This document shows, piece after piece, positions 46,303-64,000 of a DNA stretch of 64,000 nt. This DNA comes from Octopus sinensis (Eukaryota), in assembly GCF_006345805.1 (NCBI RefSeq), contig NC_043007.1, positions 10,478,001 to 10,542,000 on the forward strand, given 5' to 3'. The stretch's first letter is position 1, and the number at the start of each line of letters is the position of its first letter. The position numbers were made by a program, and so were the translations under genes. The notes beneath the pieces were generated by a model. That model searched no databases. It was not told the origin of the DNA and saw only the letters and a list, made by a program, of their open reading frames with translations.

Positions 46303-46553
46303 GAGGGGTTGGAGAAAATAATGGAAACACCATAGCATTTCAAAATGTGACCGCGTGTGTACCGTTGGCGATTTTTTTCCTCCGTCTTCCCTTCTCTGGA
46401 TCTTTCCTTTTCCTATGTTTCTGACGAAGAGCTCCGCTCGAAATGTAAAAACCCTCCTTCTTCCCTTCCTTCCTGAGCGTCCAATAATACTATATTTGTT
46501 CCACGTCCTCGCGTTGTTGTGTTTTCTCTTTGTTTTCATGTTTGGATTAACTT

Positions 46554-46597
<44 letters not shown>

Positions 46598-46608
46598 TAT
46601 ATATATAT

Positions 46609-47165
46609 AACGTCTTATCAATAAGTATCCGGACAGGTGTCAGAGTAACGAAGCTAAAATACGCAGAGTAAGGCCGCTTAGCAAAGATTGAGCTTTAACT
46701 CTGTTATGCATGTGCTCTAAGTTTTAACGTTCTAGCGCACTTCCGCTGTTTACAGCAGTGCTTCGATGGAAGGTGTGTAGCGTGTGATCGTTGCATTGAC
46801 CATGATAGAGAAAGTTATCATGGCGACACTTGCTCAGAGACCTACGCAAAGTTGCAGAAAGTGTATGGATAGGAGTGTATGAGCCAAACACAAGTGTATG
46901 AGTGGCTCAGACGATTCCAATAAGGACTAATCAAATGTCGATATTGTCGAACGTTCTGGGGTACACACAACCAGTAGAACTGAGAAAAATATGGCAGATA
47001 TGCGTGCAGCTGTGAAGGGAAATCGTCGAATCACCATCTGTGGGTTTTCAGAGAATGTGCAGATTAGTTACGGTTCAGTTCAGTTCAGTTCAGTTCAGTT
47101 CAGTCCATTATCACTGAAGATTTGGGTATGACACGTGTCAGCCAAGTTTATGCTGAAACTGCTTT
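46609..47165 (+). mobile_element. Mariner 5' fragment
   Basis: KLQKVYG*ECMSQTQVYEWLRRF...RVSAKF, truncated by a SINE. Confidence 0.7.
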
Positions 47166-47300
47166 CGCCTTTAGTCGAACAAATCGACCCCTGGACTTAT
47201 TCTTTGTAGCCTGGAACTTATTCTCTCGACCTCTTATGCCGAACTGCTAAGTTACGGGGACGGAAAGACACCAGTATCGGCATCAAGCGATGGTGGGGGA

Positions 47301-47349
<49 letters not shown>

Positions 47350-47350
47350 C

Positions 47351-47381
<31 letters not shown>

Positions 47382-47582
47382 CATACATACATACATACAT
47401 ACATACATACATACATACATACATACATACATACGACGGTCTTCTTTCAATTTCCGTCTACCAAATCCAGTCACAAGGCTTTGGTCGCCCCGAGGTTATA
47501 GTAGAAGCCACTTGTCCAAGGTGTCACGCAGTGGGACTGAACCCGGAACCATGTGGCTGGGAAGGAAGCTTCTTACCACACC
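47166..47582 (-). mobile_element. SINE family A
   Basis: Reverse complement of 32959-33368. Confidence 0.88.
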
Positions 47583-47661
47583 GTCATTCCTGCTATGTGT
47601 GTATGCGCGCGTGGATGTCTGTTTTTATATTTATGTATTTATAGATCTATTAACGTATGTG

Positions 47662-47704
<43 letters not shown>

Positions 47705-47725
47705 ATATATATATATGTATGTATG

Positions 47726-47776
<51 letters not shown>

Positions 47777-47914
47777 TATATATATATATACATATATCTA
47801 TACATACATGCATACACGCATACATACATACATACATACATACATACATGCATACACGCATACATACATACATACATACATATATACACACCTATATACA
47901 TACAGGTATGATTA

Positions 47915-48900
47915 AAGATATACGTTTGCCAAGAGGTTAGCAAAGAAATCTGACATTCTACCCTCAAGGTCATAGGATAGACCATCCAACCCAGGCGGTT
48001 TATTCCTTGTGCAATCACTCAATACTTCTGGCATCTCACTCGCTGTTATTGACCTTCAAATGAGAGCTGTGACAGACCGTCAAGTTTGGCAGTAAAGTCC
48101 ATGACCTATCCCTAACCCTGAACAGTGGAGCTACAAAACCGCAGCATTCATATCCTGAGAACCAGATAGCACGCACCCATCCTGATCCATCAAACCTGAA
48201 TTGTGACTTCTTTTTCCATGTCGTGCATCCACCTTCAGAGCCCTTCGAACAGTTTTCGTGTTTTTGTTTTAGCATATAACAACGAAGCCTTCCTGTTATG
48301 TGTCGAAAAGTAATGTCGAAAGATATTTGGGCCTCTAGCATGTTTGTTGCGTTGCCCTTTCTAATTGCCTCTTCCAGTTAATTAACGCCAATCCATTCCC
48401 CTCCAACACTAATTCTTTACTAAACGTTATTAAATTGTATTTAATCATCTCCAGAGTTCCAGACTACCTTTTGCTAATTATTGCCCCTTTCAAATGTTGC
48501 TTAACTAACTTGCTGATCCAGTCTCTGTAGTCACATGGCACCGGGAAAGATGCGTTCCACTTTTAATATTTTGATCCCTGTCTATGTGTTGTATCTAATT
48601 CGTGTGGATCACAGATTTTTGATCTGTGTTGCCGACCAATTTAAAATGATGCTACATGTACTGCTCTTACTTCAATTCACACTTAGAATCACAGACTTAA
48701 CTCCTCCAGGAAGATTGTTTATATCGCTAAACCTAATTATTTCCAAAAGCACTGCTACTCTACCGCCGACATCCATCAGACCACAAGATACGTAAACCTC
48801 ATAGTTGTGAAACACGGAGCTGATTGCATGTGTTCTGTGTGTGGTCTACGGTCTTTTCCGGGAGGTGTCCTTTGATAGGCCCTTGTACTAATAACTTGCT
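47915..48900 (-). mobile_element. Tx1/L1-like ORF2 relic (APE to RT domain 0)
   Basis: GGRVAVL near 48770 and [12 protein letters not shown] near 47975-48010. Confidence 0.55.
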
Positions 48901-49424
48901 TACAGTTTTTATCTAAAATCCCCAAAATTCCCCGGAAATTGTGTCAAATGAAATTTGACACAAGAATTAATAACGCGTATTTAGTTATTTTTCAAATACT
49001 TTATCTTTTGTTGTTATTTCCGATTTAACGGAAGTATCCTCTCAGATTCTAGGTATTCGGTGGAGTGTATTCAACTTAACCAGTCGCCACTCTCACAAAA
49101 CTATCGTTAAACACTTTTTTAAAACAACACCTCCACTCTACACACGCGTGACTATTCAAGTCGTACTTGAAGAAATTAGTGAGAGAAAGGCAGAGAAGAA
49201 AATGTCTCCTCAAACTTTTCAGATGAGTCCATCATGCAAACTCTTTCACCACATTAATCAAAGAAAACCTAATAAAACAATAACAAGAACAATAATAATG
49301 AATTATGTATATCATTTTATTAATTACTTTACAACAATCATAATAATAATTATATATTCTATCTCTGTGGCAAACTAATACAAAGTCAATTTATTACGCT
49401 GTTGTTTTTGATGTTGTTCTTCTT

Positions 49425-49425
49425 G

Positions 49426-49484
<59 letters not shown>

Positions 49485-49674
49485 CATTATTATCATTATC
49501 ATCATCATCATCATCATCATCTTCATCATCATCATCATCATCATCATCTTCATCATCGTCATCATCATCATCATCATCATCATTCTTCTTCTTCTTCTTC
49601 TTCCTCTTCTTCCTCTTCTTCGTCTTCTTCCTCTTCTTCTTCTTCTTCTTCTCTTCTTCTTCTTCTTCTTCTTA

Positions 49675-49706
<32 letters not shown>

Positions 49707-49710
49707 GTAA
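49425..49710. repeat. Compound microsatellite (TTA)-(TCA)-(TTC)-(TTA)
   Basis: Directly visible. Confidence 0.95.
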
Positions 49711-50442
49711 TCAGTTCTTAAAATTTTGTTCTAATCACTTGCCCAGTGCCCTAGGGCAGAGAAACTCACTGTATACATTGATAGGGCATTAAAATAAACA
49801 CGCCAGACTGTTCGTTTACAACGTTTGTGTAAAAAAGGGAAGAAAAAGTGGAAAAGGGATAAAGAAAGAGAAAGGGAAGTAAAAAAAAATACATGGCTTG
49901 GAATTGTTCTCACAGTGACAACGCTCTTCTCAATACGAGTAAAACAATCTTTTTCAAATTTTGTATGGATGGTTGTTGGCATCCTTTTTTTCTCGGAAGA
50001 CAATGGAGTTGCGCATAGAATAGTCTAGTCCGGCTTTTACATTTCATATCCTGATACATTTCCTGCTGTGGCTGTGTAGTCCTATCCTGGACAAACACTC
50101 CCTCTGTGAAACTCTGAGTAACAGTTTTTGTGATAATTTTGCTGCTTTTTAATAAAGCATTTATTCGAGTACTATTTTTTCAACGTTGCTTCGCATTTGT
50201 GTGCTTACTCTGGTCCGATCAACAGAACAACCGATTCGTTAAACTAATGTGCAAGTGGCTGAGCACTGCACAGACACGCGTACCCTTAACGTAGTTGTTG
50301 TGTTTTCTCTTTGTGTTTTCATGTTTGGATTAACTATATATATATGTATATATGTATATGTGTGTGTGCATATATATACATACATACATACATACATACA
50401 TACATACATACATACATACATACATACATACATACATACATA

Positions 50443-51724
50443 CAAGTGTTGGACAAAATAATGGAAATACCTACAATCATAGCATCATAATTTTGAAATA
50501 TCTATAAAACCGTCAAAAGCTTGTTTATTTTTATGATTTTTGATTTATTATTAGGGTTGCTTAATCTGTTTTGCTAAAATTGCTGTTTCTTTTCAGATAT
50601 CATCAGCAAAAAGTTACTTAAAATTCATTAAAATGACAGATGTATCGGAATTTCAAGGAGGTCAAATTCTTGGTACTCGTATGACAGGCGCTAGCGTAAC
50701 GAAAACAGTCGAAATGTTTGATGTATCCAGAAGTACTGTCTAAAAAGTAATGACAGCCTTTGAGAAAGAGGAAAAAAACCTCCTCATAGAAACAAAACTC
50801 CGGAAGAAAGCCAAAACTTTCAGATAGGGACCGTTGGCCTCTTACACGAATTGTTAGAAAGGATTACAAAAGTACAGTTCCCAAAATTACTGCAGAGTTT
50901 AATGAGCACCTTGAGAACCCAGTTTCCACAAAATCTGTTCGCCGTGAGCTGCACAAAACTGGATTTCACGTGAGTGCTGCAAACAGAAAACGACAACTTT
51001 CAAAAACAAACGTTGCAAAGTGTTTAGAATGTAGTAAAAGCCTACAGAATTGGTCCCTAGAGCAGTGGAAGAATGTTATTTTCTCGGACTAGTCATTCTT
51101 TACTATATTTCCGACCACCAGCCGAGTAAATGTGTGAAGACAGCAAAAAGAAGCATTTGACCAAGATTGTATTCTTCCAACTGTTAAACATGGAGGATGA
51201 TCTGTGATAATCTGGGGGGGGGGAGCTACGTCTTGGAAATCCGCCTGCCCAATGGATTCCCTTCATGGCAAAATTAATAGTCAAGACTATTTAAGCATTT
51301 TATCTGATCAAATTCATTCTATGTTTGCGGAACTGTTTCCAGGGGGAAACGCAATCTTTCACGATGATAATGTACCACTTCACACAATTAAAGTTGTTAC
51401 TGAATGGCACGAGGAATATTATAGAGAAGTTGAACATCTTATCTGGGCACAACAGTCTCCAGATTTCAATATTATTGAAAAACTTATGGTGCATTTTAGA
51501 ATAACAGGTAAGAAGTCCATATCCTCCACAATCATCACTACATGAAGTGAAGACTGTTTTAGCTGAAGGATGTACAAAAATTCCTTTGGAAGCAATTCAA
51601 ACTTTGTACGAGTCCATACCTCATTGAGTTCAAGCTGTAATTACTGCCAAAGGCGGTCCTACCCCATATTAAAATTAATTTGCTTGAAATGTTATGGTGT
51701 TTCCATTATTTTGTCCAACCCCCA
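50443..51724 (+). mobile_element. Near full-length Tc1-like element, pseudogenised
   Basis: TIRs; ATG at 50633; VIFSD, IFHDDNVP and SPDFNIIE (DD34E-type); stops and frameshifts. Confidence 0.9.
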
Positions 51725-51756
51725 TACATACATACATACATACATACATACATACA

Positions 51757-51889
<133 letters not shown>

Positions 51890-52378
51890 TGTATGTATAC
51901 TAAATTTAAACGATATTAAAGGGTACGAATTGACCACACAAATACGCTAGAAATAGCGATGGTCAATCCGCACCCTTTAACATAGTGATTTGTATAATTA
52001 TAAATTTAGTATAAAATGTTACCTACAAGGTTTTTTCTTTCATGCTGACCACTTGATAAAATCATTAAAATGAGCTGCATACGGATCGGACTGTTTACAA
52101 CATATCTTTGTACCATCAAATACTGGACATTAAATTCTTTGAATATTAATTTATTTGCAAATGGATCGCTAAATTATCAAATATATCTTTTAATTGACTT
52201 ATATAAAATACATTTTTGTTACATAATTTCATCCTTGAACGTTAATTCACTGATTTTACAATTTTGTTGTTGCGCTCAGACGTTCACTCCTTTTTACACC
52301 CAGGAATTTACCTGATCGTAACAATGCATATACATAAACATACATACATACATACATAAACATACATACATACATACA

Positions 52379-52430
<52 letters not shown>

Positions 52431-52588
52431 ATCAATTCAACAATGAAATAACGATGATATAATTAAATTATACCATATAGAAAAAACTTAAATATACAAT
52501 AAAATATATACCAATAATTAAGTAAAGTACAAAATAATAAATAAAAAGAATATAATTGGCAAAAACTACATATGTAATTATATATATA

Positions 52589-52642
<54 letters not shown>

Positions 52643-52643
<1 letters not shown>

Positions 52644-52920
52644 TTAGAGACAAAACCACTATTTTGCAAAACAAACAAGGAAAGACTTAATCAATACATA
52701 AAATTTTAATAAATAGTCAAAAAAACCGCCACTACAATCGTTTCTTGTCTTGATCGACAATCTTCAGGTGGATAACTGAATTATTGGAAGTCCACCTGAA
52801 GATTGTCTATCAAGACAAGAAACGATTGTAGTGGCGGTTTTTTTGACTATTTATTAAAATTTTATGTATTGATTAAGTCTTTCCTTGTTTGTTTTGCAAA
52901 ATAGTGGTTTTGTCTCTAAT
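52643..52920. repeat. Palindrome with 130-bp arms carrying mirror hammerheads
   Basis: 52643-52772 pairs with 52791-52920 with 1 mismatch; 18-nt spacer. Confidence 0.95.
52792..52834 (+). ncRNA. Type I hammerhead ribozyme core; mirror at 52729-52771 (minus)
   Basis: ccac-CTGAAGA(52796)-ttgtct atca agacaa-GAAA-C GATT GT-A|gtgg. Confidence 0.75.
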
Positions 52921-53007
52921 AATATTTTATAATATTTTACTATAAAATTGGATTTAATCCTAAATCTGATTTTTTTTCCCTGTAAATTTGGATTTATTCC
53001 CTAATAT

Positions 53008-53051
<44 letters not shown>

Positions 53052-53069
53052 TATATTAAATTAGAGATA

Positions 53070-53198
53070 AAACCACAATTAGGCAAATCAAACAGTGAAA
53101 AACATATGCCAATACATAAAATTAATCTAAAAATCTAAAAGTTAAAAATAAAAAAATTATTAAAATAATTTAAACTTATAAATTTTAAATATATATAT

Positions 53199-53237
<39 letters not shown>

Positions 53238-53596
53238 TGTATGTATATTTCTATATTTATATATTATTTTGTTTATTAATTAATTTATTTATTATTTATT
53301 TTTTTATTTATTTTTTTATATAAATATCAAAAGTATTAAAAGTTATCTTTTATTAAACTTTTAATACTTTTGATATTTATTAAAAAAAAAAAATAAATAA
53401 TAAATTAATTAATTAATAAACAAAATAATATAGAAATATAGAAATATACATATATATATATATTTGTATATATATATTTAAAATTTATAAGTTTAAATTA
53501 TTTTAATAATTTTTTAATTTTTAACTTTTATATTTTAAAATTAATTTTATGTATTGACATATGTTTTTCACTGTTTGATTTGACTCATAGTGGTTT
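53070..53596. repeat. AT-rich imperfect palindrome
   Basis: Arms ~53070-53344 and 53356-53596 around an 11-nt loop. Confidence 0.85.
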
Positions 53597-53876
53597 ATAT
53601 ATATATATATAATATTAGGGAATATTATTCCAAACTTACAAGGAAAAATTCAAGTTAGTAATACTAAATCAAATTTCACAATATATCATATATGTATATA
53701 AATTAGAGAAGAACCACCTATTATCAATTCCACAATGAAATAACGATGATATAATTAAATTATACCATATAGAAAAAAATTAAATATACAATAAAACATA
53801 TACCAATAATTAAGTAAAGTACAAAATAATAAATAAAAAGAATATAATTGGCAAAAACTACATATGTAATTATATA

Positions 53877-53932
<56 letters not shown>

Positions 53933-53935
<3 letters not shown>

Positions 53936-55051
53936 TGATCCCTCGCTACTTCGCGGTTCAACTATCGCGGATTCACGACTTCGCGGGTTTTTAGAATATG
54001 TATATATGAACACCTAAAATTTTTCATTAAATCCTTTAAAATATGTCCTGGCGAACCCGGTTGCTTCTGTGGATGCCGCCCCAGAAGACGAAAATTTTAA
54101 CTTGAAGGTATACTGGCGGTAGTACACAATTGCTACGTGCCTCCGAAATATCTAGAAAACATTGCAAGAAATGAAGCCTCCCACCATTAACGCGAGCTGA
54201 AAAAATTTGTGCTCCGAGGTTATTTACGACGACAAGAGATTTACACCTGCAGAAATCCAACACTCCGCAGTACAGAAAGCTTTGCAGTTGGCTGCGATCA
54301 TTGGAGGTGACGGATTTGCAGACATGACCACGGGAGACGTCGGTACATTATTAGACTGCCACTCTCAGCCGCTAACCGACGCAAACCTCGAAGACTTGAC
54401 GAAGTCGGCCAGCGAAGAAGAAGAAGAAACGCAGCAAGTTGTCGATCAAAGTGGCTTGACTTTGGAACGGCTGGCCAAGCTCTGCAACCTGGCTAAAGAA
54501 TTGAAAGAGGGATCACGGGAATGGGAACAACGATATGGTTCGTTCTGTGCAATTTTGCAACAAGGTCGACGAAGTCATGAATCCCTACAAGATGCTCTTT
54601 GAACAGAAAAAGAAGCAGCGGCAGCAACTTCCTATTACAATGCTTTTGTAGCCTCGCAAACAAGAGCCAGTTCCTGCTGCTACTACTAGGGTTGTACCTT
54701 CGGAAGAATTGGAAGGGGTGTCCCAGGAAAGGGCACCGCCGTCAGCTTCATCATCATCATTTCTACTGCACAGCAAATTCATCACCATTATCATTGAAAT
54801 TTTACTTCAACTTCTTTCGTGTTGAGTACAGTAAAAAATCTTTATTTTTTAAATCTAAAGTGTTATTGCTTAACAGTTGTCCTTGTTATTAATACACTAC
54901 TGTAATGGGGGTGTTGTTAACAGTACAGGGAGGGTTTCAAAAATTCAAATGTACGTTAAATGAATACTGTAAATATGGTGTCCCTACTTCGCGGAAATTC
55001 AGTTATCGCGACCGGTATTGGAACCAATCTACCGCAATAAACGAGGGATCA

Positions 55052-55054
<3 letters not shown>
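53933..55054 (+). mobile_element. Pogo/Tigger-like element, internally deleted
   Basis: TIR CAGTGATCCCTCG, TA TSD; GDGFADMTTGDVGTLLDCHSQPLTDANLEDL is a Tigger-type C-terminus. Confidence 0.85.
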
Positions 55055-55116
<62 letters not shown>

Positions 55117-55236
55117 ATAACGACTGAAATTCTCATTTTTTTATATATACGTTGTTATATATATTTGTTTTACTCTTACTTGAAAAAGTCGAAAAGACTA
55201 ACCGTTACAAAATGTAGTTGTAGTAGTAGTAGTAGT

Positions 55237-55305
<69 letters not shown>

Positions 55306-55615
55306 TTCACTTTCAGTATTAAACTACTGCGTAGAAAGATATGCGTGTACATATGTTTGTGTGTGTATGTGTGATTGAATAAATGTAATTACACGTATAC
55401 ATGTGAATGAGTAGTGTGTGTGTGTGTGTGTATGTGTATGAGTGGGTGAGATAGAGAGAGAGAGAGGGCGAGGGTGAGAGTTGGTGTTTTTGTGTCTCTG
55501 TGTCTATGTGGAGGTGAGTGAGTGTGGAAGTGTAAAGCAAACATTCTCTACTTCTCGTGTTTCTAAAGTGGCACAATGAAATGATATGTTTTAAAAGTAG
55601 AAAAATGCATTAAAA

Positions 55616-56015
55616 TCTATATATATATAAAACTGAAATTGTCTGTATATGGCAGGTTTGGCAGCCTTCAACTAACACTATCTCCTCCGAGACCCTGCGG
55701 TGCAAGTTGACCAAAATTGAGAGTATGATAGAAGAAGGCTTGCTCTTCCTTCCGTAGAAGAAAAAATTCAAATCGGACCATGTTAACACCAAAAATTATT
55801 TACATCAAAAAGGTGGGTTTTTTTCTATGAAAATCCATATTTTTTTACGATTTTTTGACTGCTGTGTTGCCATTTTTCGGTGTATTTCAACCAGAAAAGT
55901 GTTCACTTAAAGAGAATAACAAGCTACATAATGCAAAATTTTTACTTTTCAAAAATTCCACTTCTAAAGGGTCGAAAAGAAAACAAACCCGAGCAACGCT
56001 GGGCTCTACTGCTAG
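55616..56015 (+). mobile_element. Non-autonomous Helitron
   Basis: A|TCTATATATA start, CCCGAGCAACGCTGGG hairpin, CTAG|T end. Confidence 0.8.
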
Positions 56016-56325
56016 TACATGTTAAAACGAAATCTTTTACAAGATTAAATGCAAATATTTCCGAGTTGAGAAAATAGCGTTCAATTTATGTTAAGATTAT
56101 TGTTTTTACTATTGTTAACCTTTGAATCTTTCGGTAGTTTCAACATTCTCATCATTTTTAACTTTAACGAAGTTACATTTCAATTCTTACAATGTTTCAC
56201 TGCTTTATTATTGATTCGTTATTTTTTTATTTGTTTCTTGATATTGTTCTTTTTTTTTGTCTTTGTTTCTTCATATTGTTCTTTTTTTTTTTGTCTTTGT
56301 TTGATTTTTTATTTCCTAGTTTTCA

Positions 56326-57549
56326 TTAATTGGTCTTAAGGCTTCCTTCTTTTTGGACTTCCACCTTTTTTTCAAAACAGTGACAGATTTCCATTTGAAA
56401 TTTGCTTGGCAGCAAAAGCCTCTCGTCTAATTCTTCTTGACTATACGTGAATGATTCGGTTTCATCTTTTCTATAAAATGGTATCTTCTCTAATGGGTTT
56501 TCGCTTCCAGCTCCAAAATCAAAAACAGCTTTACAGAATATTTTCTCATGTTTTCCGTCCTGGTCATTTTCATCTTCATTTGTGCCTTTGTATTTATAAG
56601 ACCGATAGATTATATCCTTCAATTTCTTCCGGGCCTCTTTGAGACTTTCATTATCCTCATTCTTTAATATCTCCTCCAAAATACTATCTGTAAAATAAGT
56701 AAACTCCTTCATATCGTCGACCTTTTCGAAAATTTGTAGTTGTTCATTGGCAGAGTTGAAAACTTTATCAAGTAGTTTATTAAAAAGAAGAGCAGTTTTG
56801 TGTTTGCAAGCAGTTTTATGTTGTCGATATCGTGCATAAAACATATCATAGAAATTATCAAGACATTTGTCTCTGTAGCATATTTGATCACCTATTACTT
56901 TGGACATTTTCATCATTCTTTCGTGATCAAAGGATTTTCCAAAACCAAGAAAATGGGAATCTCTAGCTAGGTAATCCCATTTATCAACGTCGATGTTATA
57001 GGATTTATTGTTGATGATTTGGTAAAGAAATTTTGGTCTCTGAGATTTTTCTGGTTTACCAGTAATGAGATCTTTTATGAAATCAATTTCATTACGCTCA
57101 ACTTTAATATCTTCGTTCTCTTTAAAAAGATGCTCCAACATTTCACATGATGCATCTTCATGTTCCCACTCTTCACCTCCAGCTTTCTTGCGATACTCGT
57201 TGATAATTTCTTGAAAGACATGAGAAAAAGGCGCATGTCCTAAATCATGACATAAACCAGCAATTTCAACACAAAGCATATCTCGATCAGATATTTCCAG
57301 ATCGGGATTTTGCTGTTTAAGATGGCGAACCATTTTCCCAGCTAGGTAACACGTTCCTAGACAATGCTCAAATCTATTATGTGAAGCCGATGGATAAACG
57401 TAATTAACCAAACTTAATTGTTTTATATTACGTAATCTCTGAAATTGTGTTGTATTCATAATATCAACACAGAGTGGCGGAAGCTCCATAGATCCATGAA
57501 TAGCGTCCTGAAAAACCTGGTCCCATTTTGTAACACGTGAGTAGGCCAT
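56326..57549 (-). CDS. SAMHD1: SAMHD1-like HD-domain phosphohydrolase, copy A (407 aa, intronless, no SAM domain)
   Basis: DAIHG, TQFQRLRNIKQL, ASHNRFEHCLG, GLCHDLGHAPFSH, IDVDKWDYLARD, NFYDMFYAR and DFG..ENP....FY are collinear with SAMHD1; metal ligands H62/H101/D102/D189 intact. Confidence 0.95.
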   Translation of the reverse strand: MAYSRVTKWDQVFQDAIHGSMELPPLCVDIMNTTQFQRLRNIKQLSLVNYVYPSASHNRFEHCLGTCYLAGKMVRHLKQQNPDLEISDRDMLCVEIAGLCHDLGHAPFSHVFQEIINEYRKKAGGEEWEHEDASCEMLEHLFKENEDIKVERNEIDFIKDLITGKPEKSQRPKFLYQIINNKSYNIDVDKWDYLARDSHFLGFGKSFDHERMMKMSKVIGDQICYRDKCLDNFYDMFYARYRQHKTACKHKTALLFNKLLDKVFNSANEQLQIFEKVDDMKEFTYFTDSILEEILKNEDNESLKEARKKLKDIIYRSYKYKGTNEDENDQDGKHEKIFCKAVFDFGAGSENPLEKIPFYRKDETESFTYSQEELDERLLLPSKFQMEICHCFEKKVEVQKEGSLKTN

Positions 57550-57685
57550 TATTAAATTATCAGGAAAATATCTAACTTACTTTTTGGGTTGCCGTTTATG
57601 TTGCTTTTGTTTTGCTGGTGGTCGTCCTGTTGATGTTGCAGTGTGTGTTGGTTTTGAAAACTGGAGTAGAAATATAAATCAATCA

Positions 57686-57800
57686 GATATGTTCAGTACG
57701 ATATTTCTAATATCTGATTTGAAAGATCTCAGTCATATTGGCATTTGGATGTCGGAATGCCTCAAATAATGTAACGGATCCAAATGTGTCTCCGTGGTTG
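57686..57800 (-). promoter_or_regulatory. Conserved upstream blocks shared by both SAMHD1-like genes
   Basis: TTAGAAATATCGTACTGAACA (57690-57710 / 62060-62080) and CAACCACGGAGACAC (57786-57800 / 61970-61984) are identical in both copies. Confidence 0.5.
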
Positions 57801-57975
57801 GAAGCAAGACAATGGAATAAACAATGTTGCTATGTCAAAAGTTTATTTAAAAGTAAACCCAACAACCGTCACTAACAACACCACCACTGCCACCATCACC
57901 ACCACTATCACCACCACTGTTAATACTAAACAGCAGTAAAAATCAGTGACTGTGAAACTAAAAATGAAACTTGTA

Positions 57976-58160
<185 letters not shown>

Positions 58161-58587
58161 TTTGCGCAGTTTATATCTTAAGTCAGAAACTGAAAGTGCT
58201 GTTAATGGTAGCTCAGGATCAATCTCTACTCATGAACTGTTTAGCAAATGTTCACCACAATGTGCTGAGTCAAACTGGAGATTACGTGATAATAGCCTAC
58301 AGTACTGAAATCATCGACAGCATTGTGGTTGTCTGCTCGAAACACGCAACAAACGAATACAAAACTGGACATGACTGAATAAGTCAGTAACTACATTAGA
58401 ACATCTGTCGTCATTATTACATTCCCCTGCCTAAATACTGGTATGAATACCACCCGAAACCTATCACAGATACTATCATCAGCTACTATTCTGTTGGACT
58501 TTACCATCCGTACTGGTAGATAGATGCCGATTGAACTTGGTATAGTTTTGAAGCTGTAAGTTAAACTTGTACACTACTACTACTAAA

Positions 58588-58639
<52 letters not shown>

Positions 58640-58649
58640 GTAGTAGTAG

Positions 58650-59770
58650 TATTTTCAGCCTTCTATTTCAATTTGTTTTATCATTTCTCTTTTAGGTAAT
58701 GCTGTCCCTGCTAGGAATAGTACCTTGCTTCTTTCTAGGTACTTTATAGTACACTTCTAGAATCTGAATTCCATTCTAATGTCAGCGCTAAAACAGTGAA
58801 CTGTGTTTACTACGGAACTGACTTTTGCCTCATCCATTTTATACACCTTCAAATCGTCCATGAAGAGGAAGTGATTGATTGTTTGAGATTTTCCATTTAG
58901 CTGATATCCAAGGTTCATTTTCCTAAGTACCAGGGCCAGAGGAATCATGCAGAAAACAAAAAGCAATAGAGATAAGCTATCTCCCTGAAAAAATTCCTCT
59001 TCTGATTCCCAGACTGCCCAAGCTTTTTCCGTAGGCTGTCGACTCAGTTTTCCACCCAACCATACTTCTCTTCAGAAAATATGTTACATTCCTCGCAGTT
59101 CCAAACAGATTCAAGCATAATCCATGAATGTGGAAACATGTCATAAGCTTTGCTATCGTCAATCCAGGCCATTCCCAAATTCGTTCTCCTTCCTTTACAA
59201 TCTTGCATTACCATTTTGTCTATCAATGATTGGTCTTTGGTACCTCTACAACTCCTTCTACAACCCTTTTTGTTCCGTTGGTAACATATTGTTCTCATCA
59301 AGAAATGTGCACAGTTCTTCTCAAATTCCTCCTGACAGTAACTTTCACATTAATGGCAGGCAAGGAAATTGGCTTGTGGTTGTCAGCAGCATTTATATTT
59401 AATGCATCCAGGCACAACACAATCCATCCTTTTGTCAACTAACCCGAGATTTTTTCTCCATCGATCAATGCATTAAATTGCACTGCGATCACTTTATGGA
59501 ACCTACTGATCTTTTATTCATCGAAATCCCAGTACATCAAGCCCTGGGCTTATCTTTTTACTCTTCTGTGAAGTGGATAGCCTCTTGCTGAGGATAAGTT
59601 GTTTGCTTTCGGCTGCAGAGCCCATTCAGATGGAGTATTATGTTGTTCTTGCTTACTCCATCTCTTACCCTAGAACTATCGACTTACATCATCATCAGGA
59701 ACTAATCTTTCACGTTCTATAAGTTCTACTGGGCACTCTGTTCTAATTTCCCTTATATTCCTATTGAAGC
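58650..59770 (-). mobile_element. R4/Dong-clade LINE RT core relic
   Basis: DQSLIDKMV...WID, FQGDSLSLLLF, HFLFMDDLK, MEF. Confidence 0.85.
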
Positions 59771-59789
59771 CTTCTGATACTGTTCCCCA

Positions 59790-60760
59790 AGGACCCAACA
59801 ATAACTAGCACTATCTTCATCTTCATTTTCCATAGCCGGGCTATTTCTTACTTAAGAGGGTTGTATCTGGCTATCTTTTCATCTTGCTTTTTGACTATTC
59901 GTGGGTCAAAGCGGCATCCAACATCAACTATATAGCACACGTGGTACATCTTGTCCACCACAACTAGGTCCGGTCTGTTATGCTCTAGCACCTGATCTGT
60001 TTGGACTGGGAAATCCCAGAGGATTTTGCTAGTCTCCGACTCCGCCACGCTCTGTGCTTTGTTCTCATACAACGCCTTGCCTCTTTCTAACCTCTGCCTT
60101 TCGCACAGTTTTTAATGTAGCACTTTCGCTACCTAGTTGTTTTGCTACAAATTGTAGTGTTTTGGGGCAAGTGCAGGGCATTCGTTCGTAATATGGGCAA
60201 TGGTTTCATCCACTCTATTGCAGATGTGACACAGCGGAAACACTTGTTCATTCCTAAAGTTGACCCTCCAGTTCGTGACCTACGCTTGGTCTTGCACTGC
60301 CAGTATAGTGTTTTCGGTCTCTTTTTTTTTTTTAGGGTTCCTTTCATCAGCCAATCTCACCTATTTTTCCAGCAACTTCTGTTGTGGCTACATAGAATTG
60401 ATTGTGTATTTCCTTCTTACGTAATTCTTCTTCATGTCCTTTCTGTACTTCTTCCTCTGTTTTCATTTTTTTTTCTGCTCTCAATACTCTCTCATTCCTA
60501 ACTGTCACTAGCAAGGTTTCCTTACTTTGGGCTAGGTATTTCTTTAAGTTCCCGAGTTCGATACGCACGCAATCTTCCACTCTTATCACTCCCCTTCCTC
60601 CATTTGCTCTCTTCATGTATAGGCGATCAGTAACTGCACGTAGATGATGGGCTCTATGCAACGTTAGAGGCTTTCTTGACTTCCTGTCCATCTCCTTTAG
60701 CTCCTCTTCTGTCCACTTTAGGATACGAACTACTGCGACTGCGTGCGAGTTTATTGTGAA
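59790..60760 (-). mobile_element. R4/Dong-clade LINE 3' part (thumb, CCHC finger, RLE endonuclease)
   Basis: INSHAV...MDRKSRK...DRLYMKRANGGRG; ILWDFPVQTD...HNRPDLVVVDK...IVDV. Confidence 0.85.
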
Positions 60761-60806
60761 ATTATGTTGCCGAAATTGTGTTTCCTTTCCTTGCTTCCTG
60801 GCCAGT

Positions 60807-61450
60807 ATGTCGGGTTTAAAATTAGGTTGTATAAATGTACGTGGCCTGGTGTTGTCGTAGAAGCAAGGACGCTCGTGCAACATACAGGTGGTTAAACCTG
60901 GATGTAATAGCCGTCAGTGAGACCAGGATCGCGGGCACATAGGCCTTGGATCCCATTTTCGATGACTTCGAGATTTTCGCATCTCTTAGTCGACTGGAAA
61001 TGGTAGGGGGCAGTGTCGTTCAGAAAAGGCCAGGATCTCGAGATACGGTCGATCTTTCTGGATCCGGAAGATAAGACGCTGGTCCGGGATATGAACGATA
61101 ACGAAGGCAGTCCTTTTAGACTGGTCGCAGTGTACTCACCGACTGGAGTCGGGCAGCCGGCGTTCTTCAGACCTTTGTAAGAACGACTCGCTCTTTAGTG
61201 TTAGTGGGCGATTGGAATGCTATATTGGAGGCACATTTGGATTGGGTGGGGATAGTGGATGGGAATGTAGGGTGCGCAAGCCTCGCAAACCTGCGCAGTC
61301 GTTTCAAGCTGGCGGACAGGTTCAGATTCGATTTCCCGAATACTCCAGTGTGGACATGGGGAAATTGTGTCGAGAGATCCATATCATATCTAGATAGGGT
61401 ATGTGATAGACCAGCAGATAGGAATACCATAGGTTATCCACAAATTGAAT
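60807..61450 (+). mobile_element. Tx1/L1-like APE endonuclease relic
   Basis: MSGLKLGCINVRGL, DVIAVSET, RLVAVYSP, LVGDWNA, TPVWTW and SYLDRV, with frameshifts. Confidence 0.8.
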
Positions 61451-61480
61451 TCCTCGAATAGTAGCAGTAGAAGAAGAAGA

Positions 61481-61525
<45 letters not shown>

Positions 61526-61541
61526 TGTGGTGGTGGTGGTG

Positions 61542-61573
<32 letters not shown>

Positions 61574-61698
61574 GGTGGTAGTAGTAGTAGTAGTAGTGTA
61601 GTAGTAGTAGTAGTAGTAGTAGTAGTATCATATAACTTTCACTTTGAATTTCACATCCGCACTCAAGGTTTACTATAGAATAGTATCAGCAGCAATAA

Positions 61699-61735
<37 letters not shown>

Positions 61736-61739
61736 GGTG

Positions 61740-61790
<51 letters not shown>

Positions 61791-61825
61791 TGGTGGTAGT
61801 GGTGGTGGTGGTAGTAGTAGTAGCG

Positions 61826-61867
<42 letters not shown>

Positions 61868-62213
61868 CTGTTTTTTATGGTGGTGAAGTGGTGGTGGTGT
61901 GAGGAGGTTGTGTTTATTTTTGAGCCATCATTTGATATAGCAACACCGTTTATTTTCTTGTATTGCTATCAACCACGGAGACACTTTTTGATGACTTATG
62001 TTATTTCAGACATCAGACGTCTAAATGCCAATGGAACTGAGATCTTTTCGAATCAAATGTTAGAAATATCGTACTGAACACGTCTGTATAATTGTTATTT
62101 TTTCTCCATATTTCAAAACCACACGCACAACGACAACGAGGCCACAAGCAGCAGCAACAACAATATATAAAACAACTAAAAAGTAAGTTAGATACTTTCC
62201 TGATAATTTCATA

Positions 62214-63455
62214 ATGTCCTACTCACGCAGTACATATTGGGATCAGGTTTTTCAGGACGCTATTCATGGAGCTATGACGCTCCCATCACTCTGTGTAGAT
62301 ATTATGAATACAACTCAATTCCAGAGATTGCGTAATATCAAACAATTAGGTTTGGTTTATTACGTTTATCCATCAGCTTCACATAACAGATTTGAGCATT
62401 GTTTGGGGACATGTCATCTTGCTGGCAAAATGATTCGCCATCTTAAGCAGCAAGATCCCGATCTGCCAATATCTGATCGAGATATGCTTTGTGTTGAAAT
62501 TGCTGCTTTGTGTCATAATTTAGGACATGGTCCCTTCTCTTACGCCTTTCAAAAAATTATCAACCAACATCGAGAGGAAAATGGAGGTGAAAAGTGGGAA
62601 AATAAAAATGCAACGTGCAAAATGCTGGATCATCTTCTTGAAAAAAACCCACATATTAACGAAGAACTTAAGTCTGATGAGATTGATTTCATAAAAGATA
62701 TTATAATTGGTGAAACAAGAAATTCTCAGAAGCCAAAATTCTTTTACCAAATTGTCAACAATACAGGCTATAAAATCGACGTTAATCAATGGGATTACCT
62801 GGCAAGGGATTCCCATTTTCTTGGCATTGGAAAATCCTTTGATCACGGAAGGATATTGAAAACGTCCAAAGTAATTGATGGTGAAATATGCTACAGAGAC
62901 AAAACTCTTGTTAATTTCTATGATATGTTTTATTCCCGATATCGATTACATAAAGCAGCTTACCAACACAAAACTGTTCTCTTGTTTAATAAACTACTTG
63001 GCGAGGCCTTCAGATCCGCAGATAAACACATGAAAATTTTCGAAAAGGTCGATGATATGAAGAAATTTACTTATTTTACAGATAGTATTTTGGAGGAGAT
63101 ATTAAAGAATGAGAATAATGAAGGTCTCAAAGAAGCTCAGAGCAAATTGGAGAGTATGTTTTACCGGTGTTATAAATACAGAGGTACAGACAAAGATGGA
63201 AATAACCGAGACGGAGACCAAGAGAAAATATTCTGTGAAGCCAATTTGGATTATGGAGCTGGAGAGGAAAACCCATTGGAGAAAATACCATTTTATAAAA
63301 AAGGTGAGAAGAAATCCTTCAAGTATAATCAAAAGGGATTAGAAGACAGGCTTTTGCTGCCAAAAAAATTTCATTTGAAAATCCGTCATTGTTTTGAAAA
63401 GAAAGTGAATAACAAAAATGAAGGAAGTAAGAAGAAAAAAGAAAGTGATTTTTAA
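62214..63455 (+). CDS. SAMHD1: SAMHD1-like copy B (413 aa, intronless), predicted pseudoenzyme
   Basis: Roughly 70% identical to copy A by eye; motifs read ALCHNLGHGPFSY, WENKNA and IDVNQWDY instead of HD, SH, HE and DVDK. Confidence 0.95.
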   Translation: MSYSRSTYWDQVFQDAIHGAMTLPSLCVDIMNTTQFQRLRNIKQLGLVYYVYPSASHNRFEHCLGTCHLAGKMIRHLKQQDPDLPISDRDMLCVEIAALCHNLGHGPFSYAFQKIINQHREENGGEKWENKNATCKMLDHLLEKNPHINEELKSDEIDFIKDIIIGETRNSQKPKFFYQIVNNTGYKIDVNQWDYLARDSHFLGIGKSFDHGRILKTSKVIDGEICYRDKTLVNFYDMFYSRYRLHKAAYQHKTVLLFNKLLGEAFRSADKHMKIFEKVDDMKKFTYFTDSILEEILKNENNEGLKEAQSKLESMFYRCYKYRGTDKDGNNRDGDQEKIFCEANLDYGAGEENPLEKIPFYKKGEKKSFKYNQKGLEDRLLLPKKFHLKIRHCFEKKVNNKNEGSKKKKESDF

Positions 63456-64000
63456 AAACGAACAATAAATAATGAAAAAAATAACAGATAAGAAAGAATC
63501 TTGAGAAAAAGCAATAACAAAACAATCAGATCGAATATGAGGAAACAAAGAAGAAACGGATGTGTGAAATAAGAACTAAGACATTCTGAAAGATAAAAAT
63601 AATACAAGTATATCGAAACTATTGACAGGTTCCAAGGTCAGAAATAACCATATAGAAATTAACATTTTTGTTTTCACTAGAAAATATTTTCTTTTAACCA
63701 AATCTTTTCAATTTTCCAATTTTTGTTTTAATTTGAAACATGTAATTTTATAACGCAACGTTAGAAATGTATATGAGGAAGTAAAGGAATTTTGTTCAAG
63801 ATTTGGTAAAAGCTAGAAAAGGAAAGAAATATATTGAAACTACTGAAAAATTCAAAGGACATTTCTAAACGAACGATAATCTTTTTGTAAATTAAACGTA
63901 TTTTTAATATAAGATATTTTCCTATAACTAAATGTCTTAGATTTATAAAAAAAAAACATAATTCTTTGCTTTTAAATTATACCTACTCATTGGGTCACGT

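What the first reader, a model, noticed from the sequence alone, without database searches (positions are those of the whole stretch)
56326..57549. Copy A keeps the HD quartet but has a remodelled substrate pocket
H62, H101, D102, D189, H105, H110, H130, K190 and Y193 are intact. However, human Y374/Q375 read C248/K249, D218 reads Q113 and G151 reads S46. Y374 with L150 forms the steric gate against 2'-OH substrates in human SAMHD1, so A may accept ribonucleotides or other nucleotides. B retains YQHK, so the two paralogs have lost complementary features.
Basis: partly seen in the sequence, partly recalled or inferred. Interest (0 to 1): 0.7.

Follow-up and report, generated by a model that had tools for sequence, protein, structure and literature searches.

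The report
Octopus SAMHD1 paralog with cysteine-type pocket
This is an intact, single-exon octopus copy of the nucleotide-degrading enzyme SAMHD1 that keeps all its catalytic residues but has three point changes in its substrate pocket; the key change (Tyr to Cys) recurs naturally in about one in nine relatives, so it is an ordinary family member whose specificity is untested, not a clear case of a new one.

Summary
The ORF at 56326-57549(-) encodes a 407-aa HD-domain protein from Octopus sinensis chromosome CM016869.1. G151S, Y374C and Q375K are single-base changes found only in the 'A-type' lineage: O. sinensis, three O. vulgaris copies and O. bimaculoides. D218Q is shared with neighbouring paralogs.

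The residue shown experimentally to exclude ribose 2'-OH, L150, is kept as L45, and S46 adds bulk beside it. Human Y374A/F/I mutants are dead, not broadened. Cys at this position occurs in 30 of 255 homologs, with about 22 switches on the tree, and nearly all of those homologs have complete catalytic sets. The other one-step replacements of Tyr are almost never seen.

A is under purifying selection (omega 0.44 against its O. bimaculoides ortholog). It keeps 12 of 12 catalytic residues and almost all allosteric residues. Its model matches SAMHD1 structures at TM 0.86-0.88.

A is most likely an active, nucleotide-regulated dNTPase-like paralog with altered base and sugar-face contacts. Every A-type copy lies head-to-head with a catalytically dead, still-constrained B-type copy. 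Interest is modest.

The parts
56326..57549 (-). Copy A: single-exon CDS, 407 aa plus stop. SAM-less SAMHD1-family HD-domain protein of Octopus sinensis, at CM016869.1 about 10.534 Mb.
   Evidence: ORF. Pfam HD domain, E 2.3e-14, no SAM domain. phmmer to human SAMHD1, E 1e-76. 100% identical to the annotated 407-aa product in GCA_006345805.1. AF2 model pLDDT 93.3, Foldseek TM 0.86-0.88 to SAMHD1 structures.
57244..57249 (-). HD motif codons H101-D102 (human H206/D207). The other quartet members are H62 (57364-57366) and D189 (56983-56985).
   Evidence: mapping.
57412..57417 (-). L45 (TTA, human L150, the ribose 2'-OH steric gate, retained) and S46 (AGT, human G151). Every non-A-type paralog has GGT at this position.
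   Evidence: role of L150 from PMC5207538.
56797..56808 (-). C248-K249-H250-K251 (TGC AAA CAC AAA), equivalent to human Y374-Q375-H376-K377. All other octopus paralogs read TAC CAA CAC AAA.
57211..57213 (-). Q113 (CAA), equivalent to human D218, the partner of the general acid H215. Shared with B-type copies and some live paralogs.
   Evidence: role of D218 from PMC7311409.
57454..57456 (-). N32 (AAT), equivalent to human D137, the guanine-reading residue of allosteric site 1. It is N in every cephalopod copy examined.
   Evidence: Human D137N switches the activator from GTP to XTP.
57550..58103 (-). 5' flank of A, homologous (about 80%) to the 5' flank of B and of the other copies. The roughly 45 nt before the ATG are nearly identical in all copies.
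   Evidence: blastn, (window 56342-58103 against the B region); alignment.
62214..63455 (+). Copy B: 413-aa paralog lying head-to-head with A, 69.5% identical. Catalytic residues D207N, H215Y, H233N, D311N and K312Q are lost. The pocket motif G151/YQHK and the allosteric residues are kept.
   Evidence: Purifying selection among B-type copies, omega 0.32-0.41.
58757..59301 (-). Degraded reverse-transcriptase fragment (retrotransposon remnant) in the A-B intergenic region, flanked by microsatellites.
   Evidence: Weak RVT_1 match, E 0.002, below the Pfam cut-off; ORF list.

Best explanation
Copy A is a functional member of an octopod-specific, tandemly amplified cluster of single-exon, SAM-less SAMHD1 paralogs.

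Shown:
- It keeps the full catalytic apparatus: the Fe/Mg-binding H..HD..D quartet; H210, H215 and H233; and R164, K312, Y315, D319 and R366.
- It keeps the 3'-OH and 2'-gate residues Q149 and L150.
- It keeps nearly all allosteric-site residues.
- It folds like SAMHD1 and is under purifying selection.

Inferred:
- It is still a nucleotide-activated, oligomeric (deoxy)nucleoside triphosphate triphosphohydrolase.
- The three A-type-specific point changes (G151S, Y374C, Q375K) rebuild the wall that in the human enzyme stacks on the base, touches the 2'S (arabino) face of the sugar and hydrogen-bonds the base edge. They do not touch the ribose-excluding L150 side.
- The expected effect is therefore on base and sugar-face contacts and on the substrate-sensing conformational switch (kcat/Km, analogue tolerance), with 2'-deoxy preference kept.
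- The Cys state is one of two naturally permitted states of this position in the family.
For: - Residues and mapping.
- Catalytic residues: 12 of 12 are kept in all A-type copies, whereas sister B-type copies lost 3-5 of them over the same time.
- Selection: omega 0.44 for A against its O. bimaculoides ortholog (25 synonymous and 49 nonsynonymous changes, p 0.0015). None of the 41 amino-acid differences falls on a catalytic or pocket residue.
- Allosteric residues Q142, R145, D330, R333, R352, K354, N358, H376, K377, R451 and K523 are all kept.
- Structure: AF2 pLDDT 93.3, pTM 0.91; Foldseek TM 0.86-0.88 to human, pig and fungal SAMHD1.
- Cys at Y374 occurs in 30 of 255 homologs, including teleosts, a crinoid, a bivalve and Argonauta. 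There are about 22 switches on the tree, and 24 of 29 Cys-type sequences have complete catalytic sets.
- Of the six amino acids one base change away from Tyr, only Cys recurs: C 30, F 1, and H, N, D, S 0.
- Bulkier residues at 150/151 accompany Cys: 11 of 29 against 21 of 220, Fisher p 2e-4; about 5 to 0 in independent pairs.
- Roles of L150, Y374 and Q375: PMC5207538, 10.1101/296624 and PMC11074143.
Against: - In the human enzyme each changed residue matters. Y374A/F/I are inactive, Q375A/N lower kcat 15-20-fold, and D218A lowers it about 40-fold. By that yardstick A could be a very poor enzyme.
- The recent paralogs A and A2 differ with omega about 0.9.
- The O. vulgaris reference copy carries a 1-base homopolymer frameshift after codon 10.
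- No transcript or protein evidence specific to A was found.
- The compensation signal is only suggestive once phylogeny is allowed for (sign test median p 0.06).
Confidence: 0.5

Rival explanations
1. Loss of the Tyr374 side chain opens the sugar pocket, so A has become a hydrolase of ribonucleoside triphosphates or of other non-canonical nucleotides (neofunctionalised specificity).
For: - Some structural papers name L150 and Y374 together as hindering ribose 2'-OH (PMC7311409).
- Three pocket-wall substitutions arose on the single A-type stem branch and are kept in all five A-type genes.
- Cys-type sequences were seen only in SAM-less 'SAMHD1-like' paralogs in this sample. The six SAM-containing orthologs all have Y-Q. 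That pattern fits specialisation after duplication.
Against: - L150, the experimentally supported ribose gate, is retained, and G151S adds bulk next to it.
- Q149 and D319, which read the 3'-OH, are retained.
- Human Y374 mutants lose activity rather than gain substrates.
- Cys is frequent and flips back and forth in the family, which is not what a rare specificity switch looks like.
Confidence: 0.15
2. A is catalytically crippled and works mainly without catalysis. It might act as a nucleotide or nucleic-acid binder, or as a subunit of mixed oligomers with the adjacent dead B-type protein.
For: - Human data predict large activity losses for changes at D218, Y374 and Q375.
- Allosteric and nucleic-acid-binding residues are better conserved than the pocket wall in both A and B.
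- B-type copies are clearly dead yet constrained, so non-catalytic roles exist in this cluster.
- Every A-type copy seen, at four loci in two species, sits head-to-head with a B-type copy.
Against: - A-type copies keep 12 of 12 catalytic residues while sister B-type copies lost 3-5. This is hard to explain without selection for catalysis, although the chance of 0 in 12 changes at about 15% per site is still roughly 0.14.
- 24 of 29 natural Cys-type homologs also keep complete catalytic sets.
Confidence: 0.2
3. A is a redundant young duplicate drifting towards pseudogenisation, and the pocket changes are tolerated damage.
For: - Omega is about 0.9 between A and A2.
- The O. vulgaris reference assembly has a frameshift at codon 11.
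- There are many paralogs within 0.5 Mb.
- No expression evidence for A was found.
Against: - The 407-codon ORF is intact in 34%-GC, repeat-rich DNA.
- The CK/S state and all catalytic residues are kept across O. sinensis, O. vulgaris (three copies) and O. bimaculoides.
- Omega 0.44 against the O. bimaculoides ortholog is significantly below 1.
- The A-A2 differences are concentrated in the C-terminal lobe and one loop, not in the core.
- The frameshift sits in a T5/T6 homopolymer and may be an assembly error.
Confidence: 0.1

Closest known systems
Human SAMHD1 (dNTP triphosphohydrolase; e.g. PDB 7UJN, 4BZC, 6TXC)
   Same: HD-domain fold (TM 0.86-0.88). About 37-38% identity. Identical metal quartet, catalytic histidines, phosphate-binding R164/K312/R366, Y315 and D319, the Q149/L150 sugar readers, and nearly all residues of allosteric sites 1 and 2.
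   Different: No SAM domain and no C-terminal tail beyond about human residue 560, so no T592 region. G151S, D218Q, Y374C, Q375K and D137N. Dimer-dimer residues H364Y and R372T. Single-exon gene in a lineage-specific tandem cluster.
Engineered human SAMHD1 D137N (PDB 6TX0/6TXA)
   Same: A, B and every cephalopod copy examined naturally carry Asn at this allosteric-site-1 position. 6TX0 was the top phmmer hit.
   Different: In the human mutant the change switches the activator from GTP to XTP. What activates the octopus proteins is unknown.
Natural 'Cys-type' SAMHD1-like paralogs: teleosts such as Gadus, Poecilia, Conger and Paramormyrops; the crinoid Antedon; the bivalve Mactra; Argonauta
   Same: Cys at the Y374 position with an otherwise intact catalytic set. 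Mactra P0087 has the same C-K-H-K motif.
   Different: These are independent origins. Many pair Cys with Met, Phe or Ile at L150, whereas A pairs it with Ser at G151. I found no report that any of them has been characterised biochemically.
Rhizophagus irregularis SAMHD1 (PDB 9MR6; PMC12042053)
   Same: SAM-less eukaryotic SAMHD1 and the best Foldseek match (E 2e-32, TM 0.86). It is a tetrameric dNTPase needing a guanine-nucleotide effector.
   Different: Fungal orthologue at 36% identity, with no lineage-specific expansion. I did not read out its residue at the Y374 position.
Canonical-pocket octopus paralogs in the same cluster (e.g. O. vulgaris L006, L005, L007, L008 copies; P0008-P0016)
   Same: Same octopod clade (100/100 support), same single-exon architecture, same N at D137, and an intact catalytic set.
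   Different: They keep G151 and Y374-Q375. Some carry a long repetitive insert in the C-terminal lobe.

Membership tests
SAMHD1 / HD-domain dNTP triphosphohydrolase family | HD domain (Pfam PF01966) and significant sequence similarity to SAMHD1 | tested here: met
   Pfam HD E 2.3e-14, above the cut-off. phmmer E 1e-76 to human SAMHD1 chains.
SAMHD1 / HD-domain dNTP triphosphohydrolase family | H...HD...D metal-binding quartet (H167, H206, D207, D311) | tested here: met
   H62, H101, D102, D189.
SAMHD1 / HD-domain dNTP triphosphohydrolase family | Catalytic and phosphate-binding residues R164, H210, H215, H233, K312, Y315, D319, R366 | tested here: met
   R59, H105, H110, H130, K190, Y193, D197, R240.
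SAMHD1 / HD-domain dNTP triphosphohydrolase family | H215-D218 general-acid dyad | tested here: not met
   D218 is Q113. In the family this position is D 173, E 57, Q 14. Human D218A loses about 40-fold in kcat. Q is shared with other octopus paralogs.
SAMHD1 / HD-domain dNTP triphosphohydrolase family | Deoxyribose pocket: Q149 and L150 plus Y374 and Q375 | tested here: inconclusive
   Q44 and L45 are kept. Y374 is C248 and Q375 is K249. The Y374 position is Y 220, C 29 in 258 homologs, and Q375 is variable, so Tyr is typical of the family but not strictly defining.
SAMHD1 / HD-domain dNTP triphosphohydrolase family | SAMHD1 three-dimensional fold, including the C-terminal lobe | tested here: met
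   AF2 pLDDT 93.3, pTM 0.91. Foldseek TMq 0.85-0.88 to human, pig and Rhizophagus SAMHD1.
SAMHD1 / HD-domain dNTP triphosphohydrolase family | Allosteric site 1 (D137, Q142, R145, R451) and site 2 (D330, R333, R352, K354, N358, H376, K377, K523) | tested here: inconclusive
   All are kept except D137, which is N32. In the human enzyme D137N changes activator specificity from GTP to XTP.
SAMHD1 / HD-domain dNTP triphosphohydrolase family | dNTP triphosphohydrolase activity and nucleotide-induced tetramerisation | not testable with these tools
   Needs purified protein (HPLC/MS, SEC-MALLS).
Vertebrate-type SAMHD1 orthologue (SAM + HD architecture) | N-terminal SAM domain | tested here: not met
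   No SAM hit in Pfam. The ORF starts 10 residues before the HD-domain core, with an in-frame stop 11 codons upstream. In the tree, A belongs to an octopod-specific clade separate from the clade holding canonical mollusc and mammal SAMHD1.
Vertebrate-type SAMHD1 orthologue (SAM + HD architecture) | C-terminal regulatory tail (human 584-626, T592 phospho-site) | tested here: not met
   A ends at the equivalent of about human residue 560. The alignment of A 343-397 to human about 505-558 is the last matched stretch.

The most novel reading that the evidence does not exclude
The A-type proteins (live, Cys-type pocket) and B-type proteins (dead catalytic site, intact allosteric sites) work as an enzyme-pseudoenzyme pair. 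In this reading they are co-expressed from a shared divergent promoter region and assemble into mixed SAMHD1-like oligomers. Both carry the natural D137N, so their activator specificity may differ from the GTP of vertebrate SAMHD1. The Cys-type pocket would give this complex a substrate spectrum different from the canonical-pocket paralogs in the same cluster, as part of an octopod antiviral or anti-retroelement nucleotide-depletion arsenal.
Probability: 0.12. Interest if true: 0.65.

Novelty: new member of a known kind. Interest (0 to 1): 0.3.

Why it matters
If the Cys-type pocket does change what the enzyme degrades, it would be a naturally recurring second 'setting' of SAMHD1's substrate site. 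It arose about 20 times in animals. That would bear on how nucleotide-depleting immunity diversifies and on how SAMHD1 handles nucleoside-analogue drugs.

As the evidence stands, the gene is an annotated SAMHD1 homologue with a common natural variant and no functional data.

The more unusual points lie around the gene. First, the octopod tandem expansion contains three classes: live with canonical pocket, live with Cys pocket, and dead but constrained. Second, live Cys-type and dead copies are consistently paired head-to-head. Third, all cephalopod copies share Asn at the guanine-reading allosteric residue.

Tried and rejected
- Pocket geometry. I wanted to measure distances from C248 and S46 to the sugar C2' in the AF2 model. 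Model coordinates are not exposed to scripts, so only fold-level comparison was possible. The first fold search failed.
- Expression evidence. An exact-protein look-up of A returned only the genome record. The octopus skin-mucus proteome (PMC11431876) detects SAMHD1-like proteins, but the one whose length is listed (A0A6P7U4P1, 534 aa) is a longer paralog; nothing links any detected protein to A.
- Literature. I found no paper on an octopus or cephalopod SAMHD1 expansion, and none on a Cys-type SAMHD1. That library is incomplete.
- Source species. I first took the window for O. vulgaris (99% protein hit; 98.5% nucleotide identity). It is 100% identical to O. sinensis CM016869.1.
- Pair duplicated as a unit. 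A simple version is rejected because A-A2 dS is 0.056 but B-B2 dS is 0.34. The 5' ends of the two members of a pair are homogenised, so gene conversion or repeated re-pairing must be involved.
- 'Hard-wired' A-to-I RNA edit. TAC to TGC is the change that editing would mimic. This cannot be tested here, and it is not needed, because fish, bivalve and crinoid homologs also have Cys.
- C248 as a redox or metal ligand. Only human C350 of the three redox cysteines is conserved (read from the alignment). There is no evidence either way.
- P0001 (O. sinensis 'isoform X1') as an orthologue. It is a 29.5-kb chimeric gene model joining a B-like copy to A's 3' part.
Full report
**What is there**

The window is eukaryotic, with 30-44% GC, dense microsatellites and retroelement debris. 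Positions 46326-64000 are 100% identical to Octopus sinensis assembly GCA_006345805.1, chromosome CM016869.1, at about 10.53 Mb.

The finding's ORF, 56326..57549 on the minus strand, encodes 407 aa. That exact product is annotated in the assembly and present in NCBI/UniRef. It and its neighbour B (62214..63455 +, 413 aa) are the only long ORFs in the 64 kb. The next longest is 178 aa. They are also the only two SAMHD1-like copies in the window (tblastn).

**Check of the observation**

| Copy A | Human SAMHD1 |
|---|---|
| H62 | H167 |
| H101-D102 | H206-D207 |
| H105 | H210 |
| H110 | H215 |
| Q113 | D218 |
| H130 | H233 |
| D189-K190 | D311-K312 |
| Y193 | Y315 |
| L45-S46 | L150-G151 |
| C248-K249-H250-K251 | Y374-Q375-H376-K377 |

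- R59 (R164), D197 (D319), R240 (R366) and Q44 (Q149) are also kept.
- B keeps G151 and YQHK but reads N, Y, N, N, Q at D207, H215, H233, D311, K312.

**Family and fold**

- Pfam finds only an HD domain and no SAM domain.
- An AlphaFold2 model built on 102 homologs has mean pLDDT 93.3 and pTM 0.91. C248 lies at the end of a long helix, as Y374 does in the human protein.
- Foldseek against the PDB returns SAMHD1 from Rhizophagus, human and pig, with query-normalised TM 0.85-0.88.
- A's closest relatives are Octopus proteins, then Argonauta, then SAMHD1-like proteins of fish and invertebrates.
- In a maximum-likelihood tree the short octopod proteins form a clade with 100/100 support. That clade is separate from the one holding a canonical Argonauta SAMHD1, other molluscs and a mammal.
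- Inside the octopod clade, an A-type group (window A, O. bimaculoides P0003, O. vulgaris A2; 100/99) groups (91/91) with a B-type clade (window B, O. bimaculoides P0005, O. sinensis P0001; 99/97) and O. vulgaris B2; the branching among these three is unresolved.

**The cluster**

In O. vulgaris (OX597824.1, 24.95-25.42 Mb) and O. sinensis I read 16 copies or fragments. They fall into three classes.

| Class | Pocket and catalytic state | Where seen |
|---|---|---|
| Live, canonical pocket | G151, Y374-Q375; catalytic set intact | L005, L006, L007 (two copies), L008 |
| Live, A-type | S at 151 and C-K at 374-375; always all three together | Window/L004, L001, L002, L010, L003 |
| Dead, B-type | D207N, H215Y, H233N/K, sometimes also D311N, K312Q or H210Y; G151 and YQHK kept | Window/L004 (three copies), L001, L002, L010 |

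- At the DNA level the A-type state is three single-base changes: GGT>AGT, TAC>TGC and CAA>AAA.
- D218Q (CAA) is not A-specific. B-type copies and both L007 copies have it.
- Every A-type copy with readable flanks lies head-to-head with a B-type copy, 2.7-4.7 kb away (L004/window, L001, L002, L010).
- L010 is a 98-99% identical copy of L002 spanning nearly the whole 21-kb locus. It is either a recent segmental duplication or an uncollapsed haplotype.
- About 550 bp of 5' flank is shared between A and B, and the last roughly 45 nt before the ATG are nearly identical in all copies. The copies therefore spread by DNA-level duplication that carried the upstream region with it.

**Selection**

| Comparison | dS | omega | Notes |
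|---|---|---|---|
| A vs B | 0.41 | 0.40 | |
| A vs O. bimaculoides ortholog | 0.12 | 0.44 | excess of synonymous change, p 0.0015 |
| A vs A2 | 0.056 | about 0.9 | differences concentrated in residues 321-407 and the 146-153 loop |
| Among B-type copies | | 0.32-0.41 | p 1e-4 to 4e-6 |

- None of the 41 amino-acid differences between A and its O. bimaculoides ortholog touches a catalytic or pocket residue.
- The A-A2 pattern could mean relaxed constraint or diversifying selection on the C-terminal lobe.
- B-type copies have dead active sites but are still constrained, so they are functional pseudoenzymes rather than junk.

**How unusual is the pocket?**

I aligned 258 homologs, from a 5.8-billion-protein word search and a full HMMER scan of 1.84 billion representatives. 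Counts at the four changed positions:

| Human position | Residue counts in the family | Copy A |
|---|---|---|
| Y374 | Y 220, C 29, L 3, F 1, I 1 | C |
| Q375 | Q 168, then T, K (12), S, N, H and others | K |
| D218 | D 173, E 57, Q 14 | Q |
| G151 | G 236, S 9 | S |

- The flanking H376 is invariant, so the alignment is secure at this point.
- Cys-type sequences include teleosts (Gadus, Poecilia, Pundamilia, Conger, Paramormyrops, Anoplopoma, Pseudochaenichthys), the crinoid Antedon, the bivalve Mactra (also C-K-H-K) and Argonauta.
- 24 of 29 Cys-type sequences have all 12 catalytic residues. Several of the rest are truncated gene models.
- I built a tree without the trait columns. On it, Cys versus non-Cys changes about 22 times, with at least 14 independent contrasts on supported branches. 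Most Cys-type leaves are scattered; the deepest all-Cys clade is 0.38 substitutions per site.
- Tyr can reach six amino acids by one base change. Only Cys recurs (F once; H, N, D, S never), although TAY>CAY (His) is also a transition. The position therefore passes through a selective filter that admits Tyr or Cys.
- Cys goes with bulkier residues next door: M, F or I at 150, or S at 151. The counts are 11 of 29 against 21 of 220 (Fisher p 2e-4, uncorrected). In independent pairs the trend runs about 5 to 0 (median sign-test p 0.06). A shows this pattern with S46.

**What the residues do in the human enzyme (from the papers)**

- L150 is the steric gate against (2'R)-2'-OH/F, that is, ribose. 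L150A/V and Y374A/F/I are all inactive. Y374 faces the (2'S) side, and the authors conclude it may not act as a steric gate like L150 (PMC5207538).
- Y374 and Y315 make van der Waals contacts with 2'S substituents (10.1101/296624).
- The base is sandwiched between H215 and Y374 and hydrogen-bonds Q375. Q375 is a 'transducing' residue, and Q375A/N lower kcat 15-20-fold (PMC11074143).
- D218 holds the general acid H215, and D218A lowers kcat about 40-fold. The same paper repeats that L150 and Y374 together hinder ribose (PMC7311409).
The experimental weight puts ribose exclusion on L150, which A keeps.

**Allosteric sites**

From the alignment and the family columns:

- A and B both keep Q142, R145, D330, R333, R352, K354, N358, H376, K377, R451, K455 and K523.
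- They differ from human at K116Q, N119Q, H364Y and R372T/A.
- They also differ at D137N. Asn at D137 is present in every cephalopod copy examined and in 26 of 250 family members.
- The engineered human D137N is activated by XTP instead of GTP (PMC7311409 and PMC10711556). That mutant (6TX0) was the top PDB hit for A.
- A therefore probably still needs nucleotide activators and oligomerises. The identity of its site-1 activator is open.

**Verdict on mechanism**

- Most likely (about 0.5): A is an active, nucleotide-regulated dNTPase-type enzyme. Its base-stacking and 2'S-face wall and its base-edge contact are altered, while deoxyribose preference is retained.
- Rivals: a shift to rNTPs or other nucleotides (0.15); a largely non-catalytic role, possibly with B (0.2); a decaying duplicate (0.1).
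- None of these can be settled without an enzyme assay.

**Novelty**

- The gene is annotated as a SAMHD1 homologue, and its hallmark substitution is a common natural variant. I therefore class it as a new member of a known kind.
- I found no paper describing the octopod expansion, the Cys-type class or the live/dead pairing. These context features are the more interesting leads.

Noticed in passing
window 62214-63455 (+), copy B; further B-type copies at L004 26882-28102(-) and L004 10001-11221(+): B-type paralogs have lost 3-5 catalytic residues (D207N, H215Y, H233N/K, sometimes D311N, K312Q or H210Y). They keep all allosteric-site residues and are under purifying selection (omega 0.32-0.41), which suggests a constrained SAMHD1 pseudoenzyme.
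   Followed up: partly
window 57454-57456 (A N32), the same position in B, and all copies in L001-L010: The guanine-reading allosteric residue D137 is Asn in every cephalopod SAMHD1-like copy examined, including a canonical-type Argonauta protein (P0053). In human SAMHD1 the engineered D137N switches the activator from GTP to XTP.
   Followed up: partly
L001 9797-9830 (O. vulgaris OX597824.1, orthologue of A) against window 57515-57549: The O. vulgaris reference has T6 where the window has T5, 30-35 nt into the CDS (codons 10-12). This shifts the frame, so the annotated product starts at M73. It could be a real polymorphism or an assembly error.
   Followed up: partly
L004 10001-39553 (O. sinensis): The RefSeq 'isoform X1' (P0001, 409 aa) is a chimeric 29.5-kb gene model. 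It joins a B-like copy to the 3' part of A, skipping two other copies on the opposite strand.
   Followed up: yes
L002 and L010 (O. vulgaris OX597824.1, 24.97 and 25.01 Mb); window 57550-57640 and 62130-62213: Within each head-to-head pair the 5' ends are homogenised. For example, A2 and B2 share a 28-nt deletion that gives both the N-terminus 'MAIYHDAIHG'. Yet A-A2 dS is 0.056 while B-B2 dS is 0.34. This points to gene conversion between inverted neighbours.
   Followed up: partly
window 57550-57600 and 62165-62213; the same in L001 and L002: A roughly 45-nt block just upstream of the ATG is nearly identical in all copies (AAAAAGTAAGTTAGATAnTTTCCTGATAATTTAATAATG). It contains a GTAAGT donor-like hexamer and a TTAG. 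It may be a 5'-UTR splice or regulatory element.
   Followed up: no
P0009, P0010, P0013, P0014 (O. sinensis and O. vulgaris; L007): Some live, canonical-pocket paralogs carry an insert of roughly 150-200 aa made of tandem 'SESKMQxNIEGxIxGKIL'-like repeats in the C-terminal lobe.
   Followed up: no
L007 17392-21092 (O. vulgaris): An annotated 512-aa product combines HD and trypsin Pfam domains. It is probably a fused gene model, but it could be a real fusion.
   Followed up: no
window 58757-61430: Degraded retrotransposon pieces (weak RVT_1 hit, E 0.002) and long mono-, di- and tri-nucleotide repeats fill the A-B intergenic region. The O. vulgaris L002 pair lacks most of this, with a 2.7-kb spacer.
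   Followed up: partly
O. bimaculoides L003 (P0003): The A-type orthologue has Q142W in allosteric site 1 ('FWRLR'), a position that is Q in 243 of 250 homologs. The contig has N gaps, which explain the odd RefSeq model.
   Followed up: no
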